IMG/VR virus record: IMGVR_UViG_3300037010_001227
Coordinates: 149,190-213,189 of that record
DNA: 64,000 bases
Direction: 5' to 3' (one strand)
Part shown: positions 48,349-63,479 of the stretch, in pieces
Position numbering within the stretch: position 1 is the first letter of the stretch
Layout of the letters: each line of letters opens with the position of its first letter
Notes under the pieces: generated by a model
Databases searched by the model: none
What the model was told of the DNA's origin: nothing
Seen by the model: the letters and a program-made list of their open reading frames with translations, nothing else
Translations under genes and position numbers: made by a program

Positions 48349-48735
48349 ATGAATAAAAAATACCAAGTAGTTCTGATGCAGGGACATTTACTCTGTAGCA
48401 CGCTAGAAAATAGGCTATCCCTTCCTCTTGATAATAGTTCATTTAATATTATTAAACTCAATAAAAATGAACTTAAAGAGTATATGAAATCTGCAGTCAT
48501 TTTTTCTGGAACACGACCCCTACATAATAAGTCTTGGACTATTGTGTATAGGTATGATTTGCCACACTACCATCTTGATGGTGTTCTACCAAAACTTCCA
48601 GAAGATTACGTCTGGATTCCTGTAGAGAGATTTAGAGATGGCTCTTATGACTCAAAGGAAACTCAAAATCAATTTCTTCCATCTCATTTAACCAAACTTA
48701 AGCGAATGCTTAATGATATTGAGGCATTAAAATAA
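48349..48735 (+). CDS. Hypothetical protein
   Basis: ORF; TAATG coupling to cca. Confidence 0.7.
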   Translation: MNKKYQVVLMQGHLLCSTLENRLSLPLDNSSFNIIKLNKNELKEYMKSAVIFSGTRPLHNKSWTIVYRYDLPHYHLDGVLPKLPEDYVWIPVERFRDGSYDSKETQNQFLPSHLTKLKRMLNDIEALK

Positions 48736-50018
48736 TGCTTAACATAGATATCCCAATGGATTTGGTAGAGATACTCAAATCCTTTGAAGCTCAAATTCCT
48801 GGAACAGAGTTTAGGTATGTTGGTGGTTGTATTAGAGATACCATTCTTGGGATTAAGCCTAAAGATTGGGATATCGTTACTGATGCTTCTCCTGAACAGC
48901 TTGAGTCTCTTGGATTGTCCAAGGTAGGGAAAGACTTTCCAGTTTTTCTCTACCAACATCCTACTTATGGGCAAATAGAAATAGCTTGTTGTAGGACAGA
49001 GAGAAAAGTAGGAACAGGCCATAACGGTTTTGAAGTTAAAGTCTGTAAATCTTTTGAAGAGGATTTGAAACGACGAGACTTGACAATCAATGCTGTTGCT
49101 TGGCACCATAAGAATGGTGGAACTATTTACTCTCCTGTTCCTCTTGAACTCTTGGAGTATGATTTTGAGAATCATGTTCTCTGCCATGTGTCTCCAGCTT
49201 TTGCTGAAGATCCTTTGAGAGTTTTGAGAGTAGCAAGGTTCCAAGCTAAACTGTCTTGTCAAAATTCTACTATTCAATACTTTTTCAGTGTTGATACGAC
49301 TACTTTGGCATTGATGGCAAGTTTGAAAGATGAGTTAAACAAGGAACCAGTAGACAGAGTAAAGAAAGAGTTTGAGTCTGTAATGCTCGGTTCTAATCCA
49401 AAGAATATCTATCTTTTCTTCGCAACTCTTTATAATAGTAGATGTGGAGACTGGTATAGAGAGATTTGTACTACAATGTCCACACCTACTTCTAAGTTCT
49501 ATATCTTTCCAGAGACTTGTAAACAAAGAGTAGATGCTTTGTATCTTCATTTTGCTGAGGCAGCATATAATTTGGCTGGACCAATAGATACAAAACATAT
49601 GATTGCAGAAGCTAGTTGCAAGAGACTCAAACTTGGTTTGGTTTCTGAAATGAAAACTTATCTAGACTTGAGAACACGAATCTCAGAATTTTCACTTGGT
49701 ATAGCAAACAACAGTTTCTTTTGTTCTCCTCAATTAGCTAAAATGGTAATGCTTTGTAAACAGTTGAATCGCGGTAAGTTTCCGGCTCATATTTACTTTG
49801 ATATGATCCGAGAAATGGCCGCTCCTAGATGGTTTATGAAGAGTAATCATATAAACTATCAAGAGCAGGCTCTTGACATGTTTGAGTATATGTATTTGGC
49901 TTTTACTAATCTCAAGTTTAACAATACACAAACTCCACAAGAGATATTTGCTATCCAAACAGATTGTGTTACTGAGTTTGTTGAGATTTACTGTAAGAAA
50001 ACTATAAAGGATATATGA
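48735..50018 (+). CDS. cca: tRNA nucleotidyltransferase (CCA-adding, class II)
   Basis: VGGCIRD...KDWD; EDLKRRDLTINA; FAEDPLRVLRVARF. Confidence 0.9.
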   Translation: MLNIDIPMDLVEILKSFEAQIPGTEFRYVGGCIRDTILGIKPKDWDIVTDASPEQLESLGLSKVGKDFPVFLYQHPTYGQIEIACCRTERKVGTGHNGFEVKVCKSFEEDLKRRDLTINAVAWHHKNGGTIYSPVPLELLEYDFENHVLCHVSPAFAEDPLRVLRVARFQAKLSCQNSTIQYFFSVDTTTLALMASLKDELNKEPVDRVKKEFESVMLGSNPKNIYLFFATLYNSRCGDWYREICTTMSTPTSKFYIFPETCKQRVDALYLHFAEAAYNLAGPIDTKHMIAEASCKRLKLGLVSEMKTYLDLRTRISEFSLGIANNSFFCSPQLAKMVMLCKQLNRGKFPAHIYFDMIREMAAPRWFMKSNHINYQEQALDMFEYMYLAFTNLKFNNTQTPQEIFAIQTDCVTEFVEIYCKKTIKDI

Positions 50019-52303: not shown

Positions 52304-52603
52304 AGTAAACCGACTTAACTGAAGATGAGCTTGAAGTTCATATTGGTAAAGTTGAGTTTATAGAACAACAAATAGAAAACACATACAACAACAGTGAGAA
52401 AGGGTTTGGAGAGAACAGGCCAGAAATCTTGGTAACTATGACTCTATTCTGAACAAGTTAAAAGAGATAAGAATAGATTGGTAGAAGAAAGACAAAACAA
52501 TTGGTTTAATAAACCCTAAGGAAAAGGCTAAGAAAACCATTCAATACTATCTTTCAAATAATTCTCAATATCAAAACTGTGAGTTGAAATCATAAAGGCT
52601 AAC

Positions 52604-53048
52604 ATAACAATAGGATTTTATCTAGGTAGTTTCAATCCACTTCATTTTAGTCATTAAGGTGTTATTGAAAAGGTATTAAAACTATTTGATATTACAGTTG
52701 TTGCACACGGTGTAAATCTAGAAAAGCATCAAGCTTTAAATGCTGAACAACCTATCAGAATTGCCATAAGTTTAAACTTAATGTTTGATTATAGAGTTCA
52801 TCTGATTAGGTTTTCTGGTCTTTGATTTATGGTTGATGCAATAAAAGATTACGAAACTGATGGAAGGTGGAAAATTATTACAGTAATTCAGTAATTATAA
52901 TGATTTACAATATGAAATGAACCAACAGTATTAGAATAAAGATTTAGGTCTTGGAATCCCTGTTGTATATTTTATTACAGATCAAAACCTGGCTCATATT
53001 AGCAGTTCAGTAATTAGAACAATAGAGCAACTCAAAAAGAAGGTATAG
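52604..53048 (+). pseudogene. coaD: Phosphopantetheine adenylyltransferase (CoaD)-like, disrupted
   Basis: IGFYLGSFNPLHFSH*GVIEKVLKLFD and AHISSSVIR; start mutated, internal stops. Confidence 0.7.
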
Positions 53049-54376
53049 TGATAACGGCGGAATTAGAAAAACTACATCAATCGAATTTCAAGTCTCTAAC
53101 AAAGGCTGGAGTTGACTGGTATAATATTGTAAAAAACAATCCTAAGTTATTAGAAAAATATTTATGCTATTTAAAACTAAAGTCTGAATATATCATGGTA
53201 AACATTGACTTTAGTCAGTTAGAATTATATGTTCTGGCATCTTTAAGTGGCGATCCAGATATGATTGCAACTGTGAACTCTGGACGAGACTTACATGATG
53301 TGAATACTGAAAAGGTGTATGGCATTAGCAAGTCTGAACGTGAAGCTGCTCATAAGCTGGCAGAAGCCAGGTTTAAAGAAAATCCCACAGAAGAGAACAA
53401 TAAGTTAGTTAAATCAGCAGAGATGCTATTAGAAGATTTCAAGACTAAACGTAAGTTTATTAAGGCTCTTAGTTTCTCCCTAACTTACGGAGCAGGAGCT
53501 AATAAGATTGCGAGAGACTTGAAGATTACAATGGCAGAAGCTTTAAAACTAATCAATGACTTCTACAACACATATCCAAAGGTAAAAGAATGGCAGGAAA
53601 AGACCTTCTTATTCGCCATTCGTAATGGATATGTAGAAACTCCTTTTGGTAGACAACGAGGAACTCCACGTATTCATAATAGAATGGATGCTTATGAAGC
53701 TCTGGTTTTAGAGAAGCCAGCAGTAATCAGTAAGTTAAAGAAAGCTGGAGAGTATTGGTCTTTACGAGAAGAACAAAAAGTTTGTAAAAATACTCCAGTT
53801 CAGTCTACTGCAACTGATATGTGTTCTTTATCTTTCTGTATTATTAGAAAAGAGTTCAGAAAGAATCTACTTCGTAGAGCTAATCCATTTTTCTGGGTTC
53901 ATGATGCTAACGTATTTTCCTCTCATATTGATACAGCAGTAGATAATATCAAATATGTTGTAGAAATCATGGAGAACAATGTTAAGTATAAAGGCGATCC
54001 AGTCAACTATCGTGCTGAAGCAGAAGTTGGTTATAATTACGAATACGTAGCTGGTATCAAACGTTCTGAGATTTACAGTGATGCTTTTACTAAAGAACTA
54101 ATTCTGAAGAAATTAGAAGAATCTTTAGTAGCTGATCTTAAAAAGAAGTTCAAGTTGGTTATCAAATCTACTGGCACTTCTATGGATAAAATTAAAGACT
54201 ATGTAGATGCACAACGAGAAGCTAAGGGCCAGTATTTCAACGATCTTGTGGAATCTCTTGGATTAGGTGTTTCTACTCCAGATAATTACATGGCATTAAT
54301 GAACCAAATGACTTTATCAGAATATATAGAAGCTGAAGAGACACGATTAGGTGAAGATGAGGAAGAAGATGAATAA
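53048..54376 (+). CDS. polA: Family A DNA polymerase, C-terminal part (motifs A, B, C)
   Basis: DFSQLELYVLA; RKFIKALSFSLTYG; ETPFGRQR; KNTPVQSTATD; WVHDA. Confidence 0.92.
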   Translation: MITAELEKLHQSNFKSLTKAGVDWYNIVKNNPKLLEKYLCYLKLKSEYIMVNIDFSQLELYVLASLSGDPDMIATVNSGRDLHDVNTEKVYGISKSEREAAHKLAEARFKENPTEENNKLVKSAEMLLEDFKTKRKFIKALSFSLTYGAGANKIARDLKITMAEALKLINDFYNTYPKVKEWQEKTFLFAIRNGYVETPFGRQRGTPRIHNRMDAYEALVLEKPAVISKLKKAGEYWSLREEQKVCKNTPVQSTATDMCSLSFCIIRKEFRKNLLRRANPFFWVHDANVFSSHIDTAVDNIKYVVEIMENNVKYKGDPVNYRAEAEVGYNYEYVAGIKRSEIYSDAFTKELILKKLEESLVADLKKKFKLVIKSTGTSMDKIKDYVDAQREAKGQYFNDLVESLGLGVSTPDNYMALMNQMTLSEYIEAEETRLGEDEEEDE

Positions 54377-54770: not shown

Positions 54771-55193
54771 ATGAATAATGAACCAAAACAAGTTATTGTT
54801 GTAAGAAAAGACTTACATATGAGGTCTGGAAAAATTGGAAGCCAGTGTGCCCACGCCTCTATGAAAGTTATTTTAGATGCTGGTATATATGAAACTAGAA
54901 ATAGATATAATAATGAACATCCAGAAAAAATAACATCATTTTCCATTGATTTAAGCGAGGTTCTTAAGCAATGGTTAGAAGGAAAATTTACTAAAATTGT
55001 AGTTAGTGTTGATTCAGAAGCAGAATTGCTTGAACTTCAAAAACAAGCAAAAGAAGCTGGTATTTTGAATGCTCTTATTACTGATTGTGGACTTACAGAG
55101 TTCCATAATGTTCCAACTAATACATGCCTAGCAATTGGCCCTGATTGGCCAGATAAAATTAACAACCTAACTGGACACTTAAAACTACTATAA
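54771..55193 (+). CDS. pth2: Peptidyl-tRNA hydrolase, Pth2 type
   Basis: KQVIVVRKDL.M..GK...QCAHA; F.KIVV; DCGLTE; TCLAIGP. Confidence 0.93.
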   Translation: MNNEPKQVIVVRKDLHMRSGKIGSQCAHASMKVILDAGIYETRNRYNNEHPEKITSFSIDLSEVLKQWLEGKFTKIVVSVDSEAELLELQKQAKEAGILNALITDCGLTEFHNVPTNTCLAIGPDWPDKINNLTGHLKLL

Positions 55194-57578: not shown

Positions 57579-58187
57579 ATGTCCAAACCAATCATTGGTG
57601 TAGATTTGGATGATGTAATCTACCCATTTACTACAGAGTTTATGAAGTTTGTCAACAAACAATTAGGTGTAGACAAGACTATTAAAAACTGTCTTGTTTA
57701 TAGCCTAGCTGTAACATATGGGATTCCAGAACAGCAGATTTATGATTTTATTGCCTTATTTATGAATACCAGAGCAGCAAAGAATGCTCTACCAATTCCT
57801 GGAGCAAGAACTTCACTAAAAACACTAAAAGAACATTACGATGTTCATATTGTTACAGCCAGACCAGAAACATTAAATAAGGATACACGAAACTGGCTTG
57901 ATAAAGATTTTAAAGATCTTTATTCAGATATTCATTATTGTAGTTTTTACAGTTTGGGTGATAAAAAGGAAGTAAAACTATCAAAAACAGATGTTTGTAA
58001 ACAACTAAACGCTTTTTGTCTTGTTGATGATAATGTTTGGAATGCCACCGATTTCCATAGAGCTGGATTTTTAGGCGTTTTATTTGGAAACTATCCTTGG
58101 CAAAGTTCTGCTGAACGTGATATAGTAAAAGCATCTAACTGGGCTGAAGTTAAGCAAATATTGGTTGGTAAGGAACATTTAGTATAG
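57579..58187 (+). CDS. 5'(3')-deoxyribonucleotidase-like HAD
   Basis: GVDLDDVI; IVTAR; K..VC; LVDDN. Confidence 0.85.
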   Translation: MSKPIIGVDLDDVIYPFTTEFMKFVNKQLGVDKTIKNCLVYSLAVTYGIPEQQIYDFIALFMNTRAAKNALPIPGARTSLKTLKEHYDVHIVTARPETLNKDTRNWLDKDFKDLYSDIHYCSFYSLGDKKEVKLSKTDVCKQLNAFCLVDDNVWNATDFHRAGFLGVLFGNYPWQSSAERDIVKASNWAEVKQILVGKEHLV

Positions 58188-58410: not shown

Positions 58411-59109
58411 ATGAAGGTTCTTGTAACATCTGGTGGAACTAAGATTAAAATTGATATGGTTCGTTCTATTACTAATATGAGTAAAGGAACATTTGGAGCA
58501 AAAATCGCAGAAGCTTTTCTACTCCAAGATTCTGAATTAGACGTAGTATTTCTTCATGCGAAAGGTTCTAGATTGCCTTTTGATGAAGCTGATGACTATT
58601 TTGAAAAATATTCAAAGAGTGTTGAGTTCGTAGAATATGAGACTTTTACTGATTACCAAGACAGACTAGATGAACAACTTAAGCTACAACCAGACATTGT
58701 TGTTCTAGCTGCTGCTGTATCTGACTATGGTGTGGCAAATTATGTTAGTGGTAAAATTCGAAGTAAAGAATCTATGACTATTGAATTAACACCACTACCA
58801 AAGCTCATCAGCACAGTAAGAGATACATGTCCAACTGCTGTTATTTGCGGATTTAAACTTCTTGTTAATTCTACACAGGGAGAATTACTTGTAGCTGGAA
58901 TGGAATCTTTGTTTAAAAACAGACTTGACTTAGTTGTTGGAAATGATCTTCGTGACATCAAGGCAAATAACCACAAGCTGACCATCATAGAAGGAACTAC
59001 TAGTGATTGGAAAGCTACTGTATATAAGAAGCATGAGCATAGTCTTCCGAATGTTGTAGTTAACAAGTGTTTTGAACATTTACATATTGAGCGGTGCAGC
59101 GAGCTATGA
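58411..59109 (+). CDS. coaB: Phosphopantothenate-cysteine ligase (CoaB-like)
   Basis: VLVTSGGT.IKIDMVRSITNMSKGTFG; LAAAVSDY; GFKL; VVGN. Confidence 0.85.
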   Translation: MKVLVTSGGTKIKIDMVRSITNMSKGTFGAKIAEAFLLQDSELDVVFLHAKGSRLPFDEADDYFEKYSKSVEFVEYETFTDYQDRLDEQLKLQPDIVVLAAAVSDYGVANYVSGKIRSKESMTIELTPLPKLISTVRDTCPTAVICGFKLLVNSTQGELLVAGMESLFKNRLDLVVGNDLRDIKANNHKLTIIEGTTSDWKATVYKKHEHSLPNVVVNKCFEHLHIERCSEL

Positions 59110-60155
59110 TGAATATCCTCTTAGGAATAACAGGTAGTGTAGCAGCTACCTTAATTGATAAGTTAACCAAAGAATTTATAGGTCGAGGTCATGACATTAG
59201 AATAGTAGTGACTGACAGAGCTTTCCAATTCTTACCTTCAGAAACTTATCAATTCTATTATGCTGACTCAGATGAGTTCTATCGACCTGGAGAATATCAA
59301 AAGGATGGACTTGTCACGCATATTGATCTTCGTGATTGGGCAGACGTTTTCATAATAGCTCCTTGTAGTGCAAATACCATGGCTAAATTAGCTAACGGTA
59401 TATGCGACAATCTTCTTACCTCTATAGCAAGAGCTTGGGACTATAAGAAGCCCTTCTATATCGCTCCAGCTATGAACACGTTAATGTGGACTAATCCAAT
59501 GACAAAAATCCACATTGACTTTCTTTCAAAAACATTTGGAATAAAAACTATCTGGCCGACATCAAATAAACTTGCTTGTGGTCAATGTGGAATCGGAGCG
59601 ATGGCTCATGTTCATACAATTGCCAATATAGTTGAAGGACATAAGTGGTATATGCCTATTAGTTTTTATGGTCATAATACATTCCTTCCAGAATATCCTC
59701 ATCCAGGAGCTTTTGGAACTACACGAGCAAAATACAACCATACCGGAGTAGACATTTATAGTGATTTATGTCATAGTATAAATGCGGTTGAAGATGGAAT
59801 TGTAGTAGCAATAGAACCATTTACTGGAACTGCTGTAAATATGCCTTGGTGGAATGATACATATCATATTACCATAAAAGGTAAGTCTGGCCTTGTTGTT
59901 TATGGAGAACTCAACCCACATGACTGGATAAAAGTTGGTAGTGAACACAAAGCTGGATATTGTGTTGGATATGTAGAAAAAGTAATTAAAAATAGTCCAG
60001 AAATTCAGCCGGATAATTGGCGGCCAAATATGTTACATATTGAACTACTACATCCAGATGCACCTTGTGTAACAGCATTAGATTGGCCGTTAAATACAAG
60101 TAAACAATCGTATTTGTTAGACCCAACACCATATTTAAAACTATCTCAAAATTAG
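59094..60155 (+). CDS. coaC: PPC decarboxylase (CoaC, HFCD flavoprotein) fused to an M23-peptidase-like domain
   Basis: GITGSVAA; HIDLRDWAD; APCSANT.AK; PAMN; LACG..G.G; then HPGAFG...HTGVD...YGEL...LHIE. Confidence 0.85.
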   Translation: MQRAMMNILLGITGSVAATLIDKLTKEFIGRGHDIRIVVTDRAFQFLPSETYQFYYADSDEFYRPGEYQKDGLVTHIDLRDWADVFIIAPCSANTMAKLANGICDNLLTSIARAWDYKKPFYIAPAMNTLMWTNPMTKIHIDFLSKTFGIKTIWPTSNKLACGQCGIGAMAHVHTIANIVEGHKWYMPISFYGHNTFLPEYPHPGAFGTTRAKYNHTGVDIYSDLCHSINAVEDGIVVAIEPFTGTAVNMPWWNDTYHITIKGKSGLVVYGELNPHDWIKVGSEHKAGYCVGYVEKVIKNSPEIQPDNWRPNMLHIELLHPDAPCVTALDWPLNTSKQSYLLDPTPYLKLSQN

Positions 60156-60163
60156 GAGAAATA

Positions 60164-60412
60164 ATGAAAAATATTCCTGCTGAAGTTAAAGCATTAGTAA
60201 AAATGGGTTGCGCCGTTCTTTTAGTAGTATTAGCAGTCATTTTCCTTTGTATTAGTGGCATTTCTTGGTTGTTTTTATTCATCTGGAAAACAGTAGCTGT
60301 TGCTAAGTTTGCAGCGCCTGTGTTAACATATTGGAATATATTTGGTATTGTAACTGCCATTTGGTTTGTTGGTGGTCTTCTATTTGGAAATAACAATAAA
60401 AAGTCTAGTTAA
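60164..60412 (+). CDS. Small membrane protein
   Basis: Two or three hydrophobic segments. Confidence 0.7.
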   Translation: MKNIPAEVKALVKMGCAVLLVVLAVIFLCISGISWLFLFIWKTVAVAKFAAPVLTYWNIFGIVTAIWFVGGLLFGNNNKKSS

Positions 60413-60423
60413 GAAAGAAGATA

Positions 60424-61188
60424 ATGGAATCTGCTGTAGAAAAAATTGTAATAAATGTTGAAGATTACATTCCTTATGTAGATAGTATTGCATACAGACT
60501 TTGTAGAGCTTTTGGTTGTTTAAATGATTTTGATGATTTAAAATCTTGTGGTTACTTTGGATTAATGGAAGCTGTTAAACGTTACGATGATACTAAAAAC
60601 GTAACGTTTAAACAGTTTGCATATATCAGAATTTCTGGTGCGATTCTTGATGGTATGCGATCTTTATACGCAGGTAGTAAGAAGGCTGTTTCTTTTAAAA
60701 AGAAGCTAGAAGAAGTTTCAACACGATTGAAAACGGATCAAAGTGATATTCTTGCAGAAGAACTAGGAATGTCACTAAAAGAATTCAACAAAAACAAGAA
60801 TAACCTCAATAAAATGTGTAGAGTAACTTTCACAGATCTTTGCGGAAGTGGTAAATCAGCTTCTACTAATCAGATAGAAAATAAAGACGATTTATCTGAT
60901 CTACCACAAATTTTTGCAGATTATTTAACAACTCCTGATGTAGATTCATCTTTGATTTGTGATGAAATTTGGAAGTTTATTGCATCCAGGTATGATGAAC
61001 GTGAATGTGCAATCATGGATATGATTTATAGACAAGAAATGACTATGGCTGAAGTTGGTCATACCATCAATCTAACTGAATGTCGTATTTCACAAATTCA
61101 CGTTCAGATTATTAACGATATCAAGTATAGGTTATTTAAATTACCAAAACGAGAAAAACAAAATGGAAAGAAAGATAAAGATAACTAA
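60424..61188 (+). CDS. Sigma-70 family sigma factor, FliA/WhiG-like
   Basis: DLKSCGYFGLMEAVKRYD; FKQFAYIRISGAILD; region 3 LAEELG; region 4 EVG..INLTECRISQIH. Confidence 0.88.
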   Translation: MESAVEKIVINVEDYIPYVDSIAYRLCRAFGCLNDFDDLKSCGYFGLMEAVKRYDDTKNVTFKQFAYIRISGAILDGMRSLYAGSKKAVSFKKKLEEVSTRLKTDQSDILAEELGMSLKEFNKNKNNLNKMCRVTFTDLCGSGKSASTNQIENKDDLSDLPQIFADYLTTPDVDSSLICDEIWKFIASRYDERECAIMDMIYRQEMTMAEVGHTINLTECRISQIHVQIINDIKYRLFKLPKREKQNGKKDKDN

Positions 61189-61317: not shown

Positions 61318-61857
61318 ATGACTTGTATAGTTGGGCTAGTTGATAAAGGTAAAATATGGATTGGAGGAGATTCTGCTGCTGCAAGTGGCACAGAACGACA
61401 TCAATGGAAAAACGCCAAAGTATTTAAGAAAGATAAGTTTATTTTTGGTTACGCTGGATCATTTAGATTTGGCCAAATAATTGAGCATGCTTTTGAAATA
61501 CCTTCAAAATTAGAAGACCAATCTGATTTAGCATACTTTGTAACTACTTTTACTGAATCTCTTATTACTACATTAGAAAATAATAGATTCATGAAAGAAG
61601 ATCAACGAGAGCTAACAGATGCTTCATTACTTATCGGTTACAATGGTTGTTTATATGAGTTCCAAGAAGATTTCACTTTTGGTATTCCAGCAAGAAATTT
61701 TACAGCTATTGGTGTTGGAGATTCCTTTGCATTAGGTGCTTTATACGTTCTGTATGGAACAAATCTAACACCTAAAAGTATCCTAACAAAAGCTCTCGAT
61801 GCTGCAACAACTTATTGTGGTGGTGTAATAGAACCATATACAATTGAATCTGTTTAA
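61318..61857 (+). CDS. HslV/proteasome-beta-like Ntn hydrolase
   Basis: MTCIVG (Thr2 nucleophile position); IGGDSA; AIGVG...ALGAL. Confidence 0.75.
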   Translation: MTCIVGLVDKGKIWIGGDSAAASGTERHQWKNAKVFKKDKFIFGYAGSFRFGQIIEHAFEIPSKLEDQSDLAYFVTTFTESLITTLENNRFMKEDQRELTDASLLIGYNGCLYEFQEDFTFGIPARNFTAIGVGDSFALGALYVLYGTNLTPKSILTKALDAATTYCGGVIEPYTIESV

Positions 61858-62447: not shown

Positions 62448-63479
62448 TTAATTGTAGAAAATGTCTAATGGTCCTGAGTAGTTTCTACTTTCATACTGAC
62501 TTGTTCTATTTCTATTAGGGGCAACATCTTCATCTTCTAAAGCACCAGCTCTAGCTATACGTTGTTTAACTGCTGGATCTTGTAACTTAGCAGCACCTTG
62601 TGTATAAGATGCCATATCCTCTTCCGCTTGATTTCTTGCAGGGGGTGCTGGTGGTAATCCATCAGGACCAGAAAGAGGTGTTCGTGGAGTTGGAGGAACT
62701 GGTGCTTTTGCTGGCTCAGAAACAGGTTCAGGTGCTTTTGCTGGCTCAGAAACAGGTTCAGGTGCTTTTGCTGGCTCAGAAACAGGTTCAGGTGCTTTTG
62801 CTGGCTCAGAAACAGGTTCAGTTGGTGCGGGAGACTCAACAGGAGTAGATGCCGCTGATGGCGCTTCGGTTTTCGCTGGTGAGGCCGCTACAACAGGTCC
62901 AGTGGACATTAAATTAGCCTTCTCTATATGAGTTAGCATGTCTTTTTCGTCACTATTAATAGTGTTCATAATACCGGCGGCTTCAGAAGCAGTGATTACT
63001 TTTCTACCACTAAGATCATTTTTGGCCTGAGTTAGTGTAGTAATAGTTTTAGTCAGATAGTCATTTAAAGTAGTCTTTAGATTCCATGGAGCATTATCAA
63101 CAGCTCCTATAGTAACATGTTGTCTTTCTGCAAAGGCTCTCTGTTCTGGAGTAGCAATAGTGTAGCCTGGATAATGTCTCATCACATCTTTGGCTGCTTG
63201 GCTGTCTGGTTTGACTTCTGGAATGCCTACAAATTCATTACCTTTCACCAGTAACATACCATTTCTAATAATGGAGGCATCTGTTCCGATAGCATCACCA
63301 ACAGCGTGAACTTTATCAGAAATCTTACCTTTTGTGTTTCTAATGCCATTCGCGGCATACCTTGCTTTATCTTTTATAACATCTAATAAGTTCTCTTCTA
63401 ATGGCTCTGAGTTTACCTTCTCACAGGTTAGATTGAGATCTTTTAATACAGTTAGGACAACAGATTCTACAGACTTCAT
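62448..63479 (-). CDS. Hypothetical protein with Pro/Ala/Glu linker repeats
   Basis: 343-aa ORF; EPVSEPAKAP repeats. Confidence 0.8.
   Translation of the reverse strand: MKSVESVVLTVLKDLNLTCEKVNSEPLEENLLDVIKDKARYAANGIRNTKGKISDKVHAVGDAIGTDASIIRNGMLLVKGNEFVGIPEVKPDSQAAKDVMRHYPGYTIATPEQRAFAERQHVTIGAVDNAPWNLKTTLNDYLTKTITTLTQAKNDLSGRKVITASEAAGIMNTINSDEKDMLTHIEKANLMSTGPVVAASPAKTEAPSAASTPVESPAPTEPVSEPAKAPEPVSEPAKAPEPVSEPAKAPEPVSEPAKAPVPPTPRTPLSGPDGLPPAPPARNQAEEDMASYTQGAAKLQDPAVKQRIARAGALEDEDVAPNRNRTSQYESRNYSGPLDIFYN
62701..62820. repeat. Four exact 30-nt tandem repeats
   Basis: GGTGCTTTTGCTGGCTCAGAAACAGGTTCA x4. Confidence 0.97.

What the first reader, a model, noticed from the sequence alone, without database searches (positions are those of the whole stretch)
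59094..60155. CoaC flavoprotein fused to an M23-peptidase-like domain
Seen: after a complete HFCD/PPC-decarboxylase domain (~180 aa), the same frame continues into HPGAFGTTRAKYNHTGVDIY...AVEDG.VV...VVYGEL...LHIEL...LDPTPYL. This matches M23 architecture with HxxxD intact and the second HxH replaced by HIE. Established: M23 domains are Zn peptidoglycan endopeptidases or their inactive binding homologs; CoaC is normally fused to CoaB. Inference: an unusual fusion, either accidental loss of a stop codon or a functional link between an oligomeric flavoprotein scaffold and a wall-binding or lytic domain.
Basis: partly seen in the sequence, partly recalled or inferred. Interest (0 to 1): 0.62.

Follow-up and report, generated by a model that had tools for sequence, protein, structure and literature searches.

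The report
Phage CoaC fused to remodelled M23 domain
A jumbo phage gene joins a coenzyme A biosynthesis enzyme (phosphopantothenoylcysteine decarboxylase) to a zinc-site domain with the fold of cell-wall M23 peptidases but without their catalytic histidines; the pairing recurs in hundreds of huge-phage sequences, so it is a real, uncharacterised functional unit and not an accident or a lysin.

Summary
Window 59106-60155 (+) is one intact 349-aa gene in a 213-kb phage genome. Its N-terminal half is a complete PPC decarboxylase, with the catalytic His, Asn and Cys aligned to AtHAL3a H90/N142/C175. Its C-terminal half folds confidently as M23/LytM (Z about 15).

HxxxD is kept. "MLHIE" aligns to canonical "HLHxE", so the first His of HxH is Met and the second, a Zn ligand, is kept. 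The mid-domain catalytic His is Glu.

This signature is essentially invariant in 321 relatives, almost all from phage or metagenome contigs. The domain ("M23L") occurs as:
- CoaC-M23L fusions (at least 171 clusters)
- M23L-CoaC
- M23L-CoaC-CoaB
- an unfused CoaC-CoaB-M23L operon
- solo genes
- fusions to NUDIX and other domains

CoaB is adjacent, usually overlapping. One megaphage with the fusion also encodes CoaD and CoaE, and the window holds a decayed CoaD. No family member has an export signal or a conserved lysis context.

Verdict: this is a genuine phage CoA-pathway module with a cytoplasmic metal-binding accessory domain of unknown chemistry. Stop-codon loss and cell-wall lysis are both unlikely. 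I found no paper describing it.

The parts
58411..59109 (+). CoaB: phosphopantothenate-cysteine ligase (PPCS), 232 aa. Its stop overlaps the start of the fusion gene (ATGA).
   Evidence: Pfam DFP PF04127 E 1.9e-29. NCBIfam best hits are the monofunctional coaB models, E 1.8e-37 and 3.7e-34, below the equivalog cut-offs. A CoaB gene lies next to the fusion in L002, L005, L006, L007, L040 and L055.
59106..60155 (+). Fusion gene CoaC-M23L (349 aa from ATG 59106; the open frame begins at GTG 59094).
   Evidence: The AF2 full-length model has pLDDT 95.4 and pTM 0.93.
59106..59636 (+). PPC decarboxylase (CoaC/HFCD flavoprotein) domain. Catalytic residues are His76, Asn128 (PAMNTLMW) and Cys162 (LACGQCG), in P0001 numbering.
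   Evidence: PF02441 E 4.9e-32. phmmer against human PPCDC 1qzu gives E 4e-41 and against AtHAL3a 1e20 E 1.3e-40, with the residues aligned to H90, N142 and C175. Foldseek finds 46% identity to 1mvn. These residues are invariant in 117 homologues.
59637..60152 (+). M23-fold domain with a remodelled active site (M23L). His216 at 59739-41, Asp220 at 59751-53, Glu272 at 59907-09, Met313 at 60030-32, His315 at 60036-38, Glu317 at 60042-44.
   Evidence: Residue conservation across 321 relatives is.
52600..53040 (+). Decayed CoaD (phosphopantetheine adenylyltransferase)-like pseudogene: a GSFNPLHFSH motif followed by a stop, further stops, and what looks by eye like a frameshift.
   Evidence: PF01467 match of 26.8 bits with a stop inside it; translations. 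Compare the intact CoaD of megaphage LR756501.

Best explanation
Shown:
- The gene is a genuine, selectively maintained huge-phage gene.
- With the overlapping upstream CoaB gene it forms a two-gene module for steps 2 and 3 of coenzyme A synthesis (4'-phosphopantothenate + cysteine -> PPC -> 4'-phosphopantetheine).
- The C-terminal M23L domain keeps the M23 fold and the three metal ligands (His216, Asp220, His315).
- Everywhere in the family, the two catalytic histidines are exchanged for Glu272 and Met313.

Inferred:
- M23L works in the cytoplasm and is not a cell-wall lysin.
- It is an autonomous metal-dependent module, since it also exists as a solo gene, that phages repeatedly couple to PPC decarboxylase.
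- Most likely it is a hydrolase that uses the metal-bound water with Glu272 as general base on a small, side-chain-poor amide or thiol metabolite tied to the cysteine-dependent steps. Examples would be a cysteine-supplying peptide such as Cys-Gly or gamma-Glu-Cys, or a pantetheine-type amide.

The exact substrate is unknown. The confidence of 0.5 is for the whole statement. The shown part alone (a real, conserved CoA module that is not a lysin) I put at about 0.85, and the specific 'hydrolase' reading at about 0.35-0.4.
For: Real and conserved:
- More than 120 clusters cover 97-99% of the protein.
- 171 CoaC-M23L fusions are among 321 family members.
- The big profile search finds 485 clusters at E<=1e-30.

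Functional coupling (Rosetta-stone pattern):
- CoaC-M23L; the reverse order M23L-CoaC (P0228); the triple fusion M23L-CoaC-CoaB (P0305).
- An unfused operon CoaC, CoaB, M23L in L028.
- Well-supported branches of the domain tree force at least 6 gains or losses of the fusion.

A genuine CoA pathway:
- CoaC residues align to AtHAL3a H90, N142 and C175.
- CoaB is adjacent in the window and in 6 other loci.
- Megaphage LR756501 also has adjacent CoaD and CoaE.
- The window holds a CoaD remnant.

An active-site-like constellation under selection:
- H216, D220 and H315 are kept in 100% of members, E272 in 317/321, M313 in 320/321.
- R211, Y222, T244, W252/W253, T256, Y270, E317 and D343-P-T are also conserved, identically in fused and solo forms.

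Cytoplasmic: no TM or signal peptide, and no conserved membrane-protein neighbour.
Against: - No biochemical datum exists for any family member.
- M23L occurs solo in complete genomes that lack CoaB and CoaC: PA5oct and the 482-kb and 437-kb records.
- It is also fused to unrelated domains: NUDIX, phrog_21276, repeats. Its function is therefore not specific to the CoA pathway and could be binding rather than catalysis.
- LECT2 shows that an M23 fold with an intact Zn site can be non-enzymatic.
- I could not inspect the model coordinates, so I do not know whether the metal site faces the CoaC active site.
- The complex prediction for the unfused pair gave no verdict.
Confidence: 0.5

Rival explanations
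1. M23L is a non-catalytic, Zn-stabilised binding module, like LECT2 or the LytM-type protein-protein adaptors. It docks whatever enzyme it is attached to (CoaC, NUDIX and others) onto a host or phage partner, or regulates that enzyme.
For: - Both canonical catalytic His residues are lost.
- Several unrelated fusion partners occur, in both orientations.
- Solo genes are common.
- The best structural matches include the non-enzymatic EnvC, DipM, SpoIIQ and LECT2.
- The pTM of 0.93 implies rigid packing on CoaC.
Against: - Degenerate LytM adaptors usually lose their metal ligands (my own knowledge of the family); here the ligands are 100% conserved.
- An acidic residue invariably sits at a catalytic position, together with many other invariant polar residues. 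That is more typical of an active site.
- No partner has been identified.
Confidence: 0.3
2. M23L is a true peptidoglycan endopeptidase (endolysin or lysis accessory) displayed on the oligomeric CoaC scaffold.
For: - The fold and the HxxxD motif are M23.
- Weak PHROG endolysin hits, E 6e-4 to 5e-3.
- In the window a 3-TM 82-aa ORF follows directly at 60164-60412.
- The PA5oct homologue was annotated as a murein hydrolase (PMC7318152).
Against: - Both catalytic His residues are replaced throughout the family.
- There is no export signal.
- The TM neighbour is not conserved in the other loci.
- The neighbours are a nucleotidase, a sigma factor and PTH2, not a lysis cassette.
- Partners are cytoplasmic enzymes.
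- In BFVD the subfamily stands apart from phage lysins: E 1.8e-13 for its own kind against 5e-6 or weaker for canonical M23.
Confidence: 0.06
3. The CoaB-like and CoaC-like pair does not make CoA. Instead it attaches and decarboxylates cysteine on another carboxylate (a peptide, RiPP-like or nucleotide-linked substrate), and M23L is the associated peptidase.
For: - HFCD enzymes include the LanD peptide decarboxylases.
- Another huge phage (LR745208) has a CoaB-like domain fused to an aldolase-II-like domain next to a methyltransferase, and a solo M23L.
- NCBIfam scores are below the equivalog cut-offs.
Against: - The Cys equivalent to AtHAL3a C175 and the PXMNXXMW motif, which are typical of PPC decarboxylases and not of LanD enzymes (the PPCDC-versus-LanD distinction is from my own knowledge), are invariant.
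- Identity to plant and human PPCDC is 42-46%.
- CoaD and CoaE are in the same megaphage, and a CoaD remnant is in the window.
Confidence: 0.07
4. The fusion is an artefact: a lost stop codon, an assembly error or a gene-calling error in this one genome.
For: I could not check reads.
Against: - The same fused frame is found in more than 170 clusters from many samples.
- It is also in GenBank megaphage LR756501 at 35% identity.
- The linker is modelled with confidence.
- GC content is similar in the two halves: 0.377 and 0.355.
Confidence: 0.01

Closest known systems
Monofunctional PPC decarboxylases (Arabidopsis AtHAL3a, human PPCDC, streptococcal CoaC)
   Same: The N-terminal 177 aa are 42-46% identical and share the fold. 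The catalytic His, Asn and Cys align. CoaB is a separate gene, as in streptococci and eukaryotes.
   Different: The window protein carries a 172-aa C-terminal M23-fold domain. None of the PPCDC or HFCD structures matched in PDB has such a domain.
Bifunctional bacterial CoaBC (Dfp)
   Same: It performs the same two pathway steps, and CoaC is the N-terminal domain of a two-domain protein.
   Different: Here M23L occupies the C-terminal position instead of CoaB, and CoaB is encoded upstream. Identity to M. smegmatis CoaBC is only about 25%. A rare relative (P0305) is M23L-CoaC-CoaB.
Catalytic M23 peptidases (lysostaphin, LytM, MepM, zoocin A)
   Same: The fold matches (Z 12-15). HxxxD and the last His ligand are kept, as are the FGxR, Y-x-[HE]-L and L-H-x-E strands.
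   Different: Both non-ligand catalytic His residues are replaced (Glu272, Met313). A family-specific FTG...PWWxDT loop is present. There is no export signal, and the context is cytoplasmic fusion. The window protein scores below the Pfam cut-off.
LECT2 and degenerate LytM domains (EnvC, NlpD, DipM, SpoIIQ)
   Same: All have the M23 fold without peptidase chemistry. LECT2, like M23L, keeps the Zn ligands (LECT2's own residues are from my own knowledge); profile E 1.5e-3, Z 14.1.
   Different: These proteins are extracytoplasmic protein-binding factors, and EnvC-type domains have lost the metal ligands (own knowledge). M23L is phage-encoded, predicted cytoplasmic, and has an invariant Glu at the catalytic position.
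PA5oct gp441 and its homologues in related Pseudomonas jumbo phages ('peptidase M23' or 'hypothetical protein')
   Same: It belongs to the same M23L subfamily: 39% identity over aa 198-349.
   Different: It is a solo 164-aa protein in a genome with no CoaB or CoaC. It was annotated as a murein hydrolase by bioinformatics only and was not detected in virions (PMC7318152).

Membership tests
PPC decarboxylase (CoaC, HFCD flavoprotein family) | Flavoprotein (PF02441) fold and domain over the curated cut-off | tested here: met
   111.2 bits against a cut-off of 22.7. Foldseek to 1mvn, 1e20 and 1qzu gives E 5e-19 to 1e-14.
PPC decarboxylase (CoaC, HFCD flavoprotein family) | Catalytic His (AtHAL3a H90), Asn of the PXMNXXMW motif (N142), and Cys of the substrate clamp (C175, which separates PPCDC from LanD enzymes) | tested here: met
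   His76, Asn128 and Cys162 (P0001 numbering) align to H90, N142 and C175. They are invariant in 117 homologues. The roles of these residues are from my own knowledge of the AtHAL3a literature.
PPC decarboxylase (CoaC, HFCD flavoprotein family) | FMN binding and decarboxylation of PPC to 4'-phosphopantetheine | not testable with these tools
   Needs a purified-enzyme assay.
Bifunctional CoaBC (Dfp) | CoaC and CoaB domains in one polypeptide | tested here: not met
   CoaB is a separate overlapping gene at 58411-59109.
Peptidase M23 (catalytic Zn endopeptidases) | M23/LytM fold | tested here: met
   Z 14.9 to 4bh5, 14.7 to 9gy1, 13.8 to 4lxc. hhalign against MepM gives probability 91%.
Peptidase M23 (catalytic Zn endopeptidases) | Pfam PF01551 gathering score | tested here: not met
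   18.5-20.8 bits against a cut-off of 28.7 for the window protein. Some relatives pass at 29-44 bits.
Peptidase M23 (catalytic Zn endopeptidases) | HxxxD motif (two Zn ligands) | tested here: met
   H216-T-G-V-D220 is aligned to MepM HRGVD and is kept in 321/321 members.
Peptidase M23 (catalytic Zn endopeptidases) | HxH motif (catalytic His plus Zn-ligand His) and the mid-domain catalytic His | tested here: not met
   M313-L-H315 replaces HLH, and Y-G-E272 replaces Y-x-H. Met is present in 320/321 members and Glu in 317/321.
Peptidase M23 (catalytic Zn endopeptidases) | Access to the cell wall (signal peptide or TM segment, virion location, or a lysis cassette) | tested here: not met
   There are no TM or signal segments in the family and no conserved TM neighbour. 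The window neighbours are not lysis genes.
Degenerate LytM activator domains (EnvC/NlpD type) | Loss of the metal ligands | tested here: not met
   All three ligands are invariant. The defining feature itself is from my own knowledge.

The most novel reading that the evidence does not exclude
M23L is a new kind of cytoplasmic metalloenzyme built on the M23 fold, with His/Asp/His ligands and a Glu base in place of the His pair. It would add an undescribed activity to coenzyme A metabolism in huge phages. Examples: liberating cysteine for CoaB from small thiol peptides, or hydrolysing or handling the thiol-amide end of PPC or 4'-phosphopantetheine. The activity would also be used on its own by jumbo phages such as PA5oct.
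Probability: 0.3. Interest if true: 0.8.

Novelty: new variant of a known kind. Interest (0 to 1): 0.62.

Why it matters
- M23 domains are regarded as extracytoplasmic cell-wall enzymes or their inactive adaptors. A large, strictly conserved, virus-restricted subfamily that sits in the cytoplasm, keeps the metal site and swaps the catalytic pair would widen what this fold is known to do.
- The subfamily is currently auto-annotated as 'murein hydrolase/endolysin', which is probably wrong. That matters for phage-therapy genome annotation, for example of PA5oct-like phages.
- Huge phages appear to carry up to four of the five CoA biosynthetic steps. The repeated physical coupling of M23L to PPC decarboxylase marks an unknown requirement at the cysteine-dependent step.
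- The question is directly testable with two small soluble proteins.

Tried and rejected
- The search for related loci: the domain alignment had no stretch conserved enough, and the single protein found nothing in IMG/VR. I replaced it with a degenerate DNA pattern for the PWWNDT motif.
- The same pattern in cellular genomes gave 120 matches, none a family member.
- Complex prediction on the naturally unfused CoaC and M23L pair of L028 scored 0.00, no verdict. This is no evidence either way.
- Holin-endolysin idea: the 3-TM ORF downstream in the window is not conserved next to other family members.
- 'Amidoligase plus M23L' as a general rule: one solo gene overlaps an R2K ATP-grasp gene. The upstream neighbours of the other solos share no family with each other or with CoaB, and have no Pfam hit.
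- Pantothenate kinase types III and II were not found in five fusion-bearing genomes. The type II control rang nowhere, so that result is uninformative. Type I was not searched.
- ACP (PF00550) and PPTase (PF01648) are absent from the window's genome.
- Rfam found nothing in the window, and there are no tRNAs.
- Literature searches found no description of the fusion.
- DNA-level search in the phage collection found no match.
- I used the big profile search because the word search and family scans left the C-terminal domain's role open.
Full report
WHAT IS THERE

The window is the last 64 kb of a 213,189-bp IMG/VR virus record that CheckV rates 95% complete. Its GC content is 34%. A single frame is open from 59094 to the stop at 60153-60155. 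The probable start is ATG 59106. It overlaps the TGA of the upstream gene as ATGA and gives the 349-aa protein that is on record (P0003).

Pfam finds a full Flavoprotein (HFCD) domain at aa 6-176, E 4.9e-32. It finds only a sub-threshold Peptidase_M23 match at aa 215-301 (18.5-20.8 bits against a cut-off of 28.7). The upstream gene, 58411-59109, is a DFP/CoaB domain protein (E 1.9e-29). Its best NCBIfam hits are the monofunctional phosphopantothenate-cysteine ligases.

THE TWO DOMAINS

N-terminal half. It is 42-46% identical to the solved monofunctional PPC decarboxylases AtHAL3a and human PPCDC (Foldseek E 5e-19 to 1e-14; phmmer E about 1e-40). In that alignment His76, Asn128 (PAMNTLMW) and Cys162 (LACGQCG), in P0001 numbering, pair with AtHAL3a His90, Asn142 and Cys175. 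From my own knowledge these are the catalytic His, the motif Asn, and the clamp Cys that separates PPC decarboxylases from LanD-type peptide decarboxylases. All three are invariant in 117 homologues.

C-terminal half. Folded alone with 80 homologues it gives pLDDT 95.6. It matches M23/LytM structures far above everything else: VIA-align Z 14.9 to the EnvC LytM domain, 14.7 to StM23, 14.1 to LECT2 and 13.8 to lysostaphin. The next fold, EIIA-Glc, scores 6.5 (Foldseek). A profile of the domain finds zoocin A (E 5e-4), LECT2 and lysostaphin in PDB. hhalign against the E. coli MepM M23 domain gives probability 91%, E 1e-6.

That hhalign alignment settles the motif question:
- HTGVD pairs with HRGVD, so HxxxD is kept.
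- Y-G-E pairs with Y-M-H, so one catalytic His has become Glu272.
- M-L-H-I-E pairs with H-L-H-Y-E, so the first catalytic His of HxH has become Met313. The ligand His315 and Glu317 are kept.

The metal-ligand triad is intact, and both non-ligand catalytic histidines are gone. The full-length AF2 model has pLDDT 95.4 and pTM 0.93, which implies the two domains pack rigidly. I could not read the coordinates.

NOT AN ACCIDENT

The word search found more than 120 clusters (at 90% identity) that cover 97-99% of the protein at 39-84% identity, on contigs up to 622 kb. GenBank megaphage LR756501 (735 kb) has the same fusion at 35% identity, with CoaB immediately downstream. In L005, L006 and L007 the pair CoaB then CoaC-M23L recurs with overlapping stop and start while all other neighbours differ.

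A profile search of 1.84 billion representatives found 485 clusters at E<=1e-30. Among the best 150 the architectures are:
- 56 or more CoaC-M23L fusions
- 45 solo proteins
- one M23L-CoaC (P0228)
- one M23L-CoaC-CoaB (P0305)
- NUDIX-M23L (P0294, P0276) and M23L-NUDIX (weak, P0328)
- phrog_21276 fused on either side (P0291, P0322)
- repeat-containing and unknown extensions

In IMG/VR locus L028 the three activities are three separate overlapping genes, CoaC, CoaB, M23L. On a poorly resolved tree of the M23L domain, fused versus unfused needs 31 changes against a shuffled mean of 54. Well-supported branches alone force at least 6 changes. Fusion in both orders, a triple fusion and an unfused operon together form a classic sign of functional coupling.

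A VIRAL, CYTOPLASMIC SUBFAMILY UNDER STRONG CONSTRAINT

Across 321 members (171 CoaC fusions, 104 solo, 46 with other extensions), conservation is the same in every architecture:
- H216, D220 and H315 are kept in every member.
- E272 is kept in 317 members and M313 in 320.
- R211, Y222, T244, W252/W253, T256, Y270, E317 and D343-P-T are nearly invariant.

No member has a predicted TM or signal segment, and no membrane protein is a conserved neighbour. The 3-TM ORF at 60164-60412 in the window is specific to its lineage.

The PWWNDT-motif pattern hit 34 true family members among the 80 IMG/VR loci examined (of 92 matching stretches), and none among 120 loci from cellular genomes. ESM Atlas clusters of the fusion and of the solo form are 100% and 85% viral. 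In BFVD the only close match is a 164-aa viral protein (E 1.8e-13), whereas canonical phage M23 lysins score 5e-6 or weaker.

Solo M23L occurs in complete genomes that have neither CoaB nor CoaC: PA5oct and the 482-kb and 437-kb records. PA5oct gp441 was called a murein hydrolase from bioinformatics alone and was not detected in virions (PMC7318152).

THE CoA CONTEXT IS REAL

Megaphage LR756501 also encodes an adjacent CoaD (149 aa) and CoaE (205 aa). That makes four of the five pathway steps. The window itself carries a decayed CoaD-like gene at about 52600-53040, with in-frame stops and what looks by eye like a frameshift. No ACP or PPTase is present in the genome.

HOW IT MOST LIKELY WORKS

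Shown: the module supplies PPC synthetase and PPC decarboxylase, and M23L is a conserved, metal-ligand-bearing M23 fold that phages repeatedly tie to the decarboxylase.

Inferred:
- It acts in the cytoplasm and not on the wall.
- An invariant Glu at a catalytic position, many invariant polar residues and a conserved remodelled loop (FTG...PWWxDT) together look more like a re-tooled active site (metal-bound water plus a Glu base) than like a decayed one.
- I therefore favour a small-molecule or peptide amidohydrolase linked to the cysteine-dependent steps.

The main rival is a Zn-stabilised adaptor like LECT2, which the many different fusion partners would fit. A lytic role, a non-CoA substrate for the CoaB/CoaC pair, and an artefact are each unlikely. 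The evidence for and against each is listed under the rival explanations.

COMPARISON AND NOVELTY

The CoaC half is an ordinary, monofunctional-type member of its family. The M23 half passes the tests for fold and Zn ligands but fails the tests for catalytic residues, export and (for this protein) the Pfam threshold. I therefore do not file it as an M23 peptidase. It also fails the definition of degenerate LytM adaptors, because the ligands are kept.

The architecture exists in databases under automatic names. I found no paper that describes it. I rate it a new variant of a known kind, with a real chance (about 0.3) that it hides a new enzymatic activity.

LIMITS

- No read check was possible.
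- The complex prediction gave no verdict.
- The domain tree is weakly resolved.
- Residue roles in AtHAL3a and LytM are from my own knowledge of the literature.

Noticed in passing
window 52600-53040 (+): Decayed phosphopantetheine adenylyltransferase (CoaD)-like gene with TAA/TGA stops and what looks by eye like a frameshift. It lies in a stretch of about 1.3 kb with no long ORF, between a methyltransferase gene and a DNA polymerase A fragment.
   Followed up: partly
window 53048-54376 (+): This 442-aa ORF holds only the C-terminal (palm/fingers) part of a family A DNA polymerase (PF00476 profile positions 204-379). I did not look for the N-terminal part, so the polymerase may be split or interrupted.
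   Followed up: no
window 60164-60412 (+): An 82-aa ORF with three hydrophobic segments and a charged C-terminus lies 8 bp downstream of the fusion gene. It looks like a holin, but it is not conserved next to other family members.
   Followed up: partly
window 62448-63479 (-): The 343-aa ORF contains four tandem copies of a 10-residue PEPVSEPAKA-type repeat in a Pro/Ala-rich region. It has no Pfam family.
   Followed up: no
window 60424-61188, 61318-61857, 54771-55193, 48735-50018, 57579-58187 (+): The phage encodes a sigma-70-type factor, a weakly proteasome/HslV-like protein, a PTH2 peptidyl-tRNA hydrolase, a CCA-adding/poly(A) polymerase-like enzyme and an NT5C-type deoxynucleotidase. tRNA and RNA-repair genes (MnmA, TilS, RNA ligases, CysRS) also lie near M23L genes in other phages.
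   Followed up: partly
L013 1435-2601 (LR745208, 485-kb phage): A CoaB-like domain is fused to a weak class II aldolase-like C-terminal domain and overlaps a SAM methyltransferase gene. The genome has a solo M23L but no CoaC, so this may be a repurposed CoaB.
   Followed up: partly
L016 4168-5552 (233-kb JGI contig): A solo M23L gene overlaps an upstream R2K-type ATP-grasp ligase gene. CysRS, a flavodoxin-like reductase and a glutaredoxin are nearby, a possible cysteine or thiol theme.
   Followed up: partly
P0276 aa 54-124 (NUDIX-M23L fusion): The best NCBIfam hit of its NUDIX domain is CoA pyrophosphatase (E 7.8e-7, far below the cut-off). This is a weak hint that a second fusion partner is also CoA-related.
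   Followed up: partly
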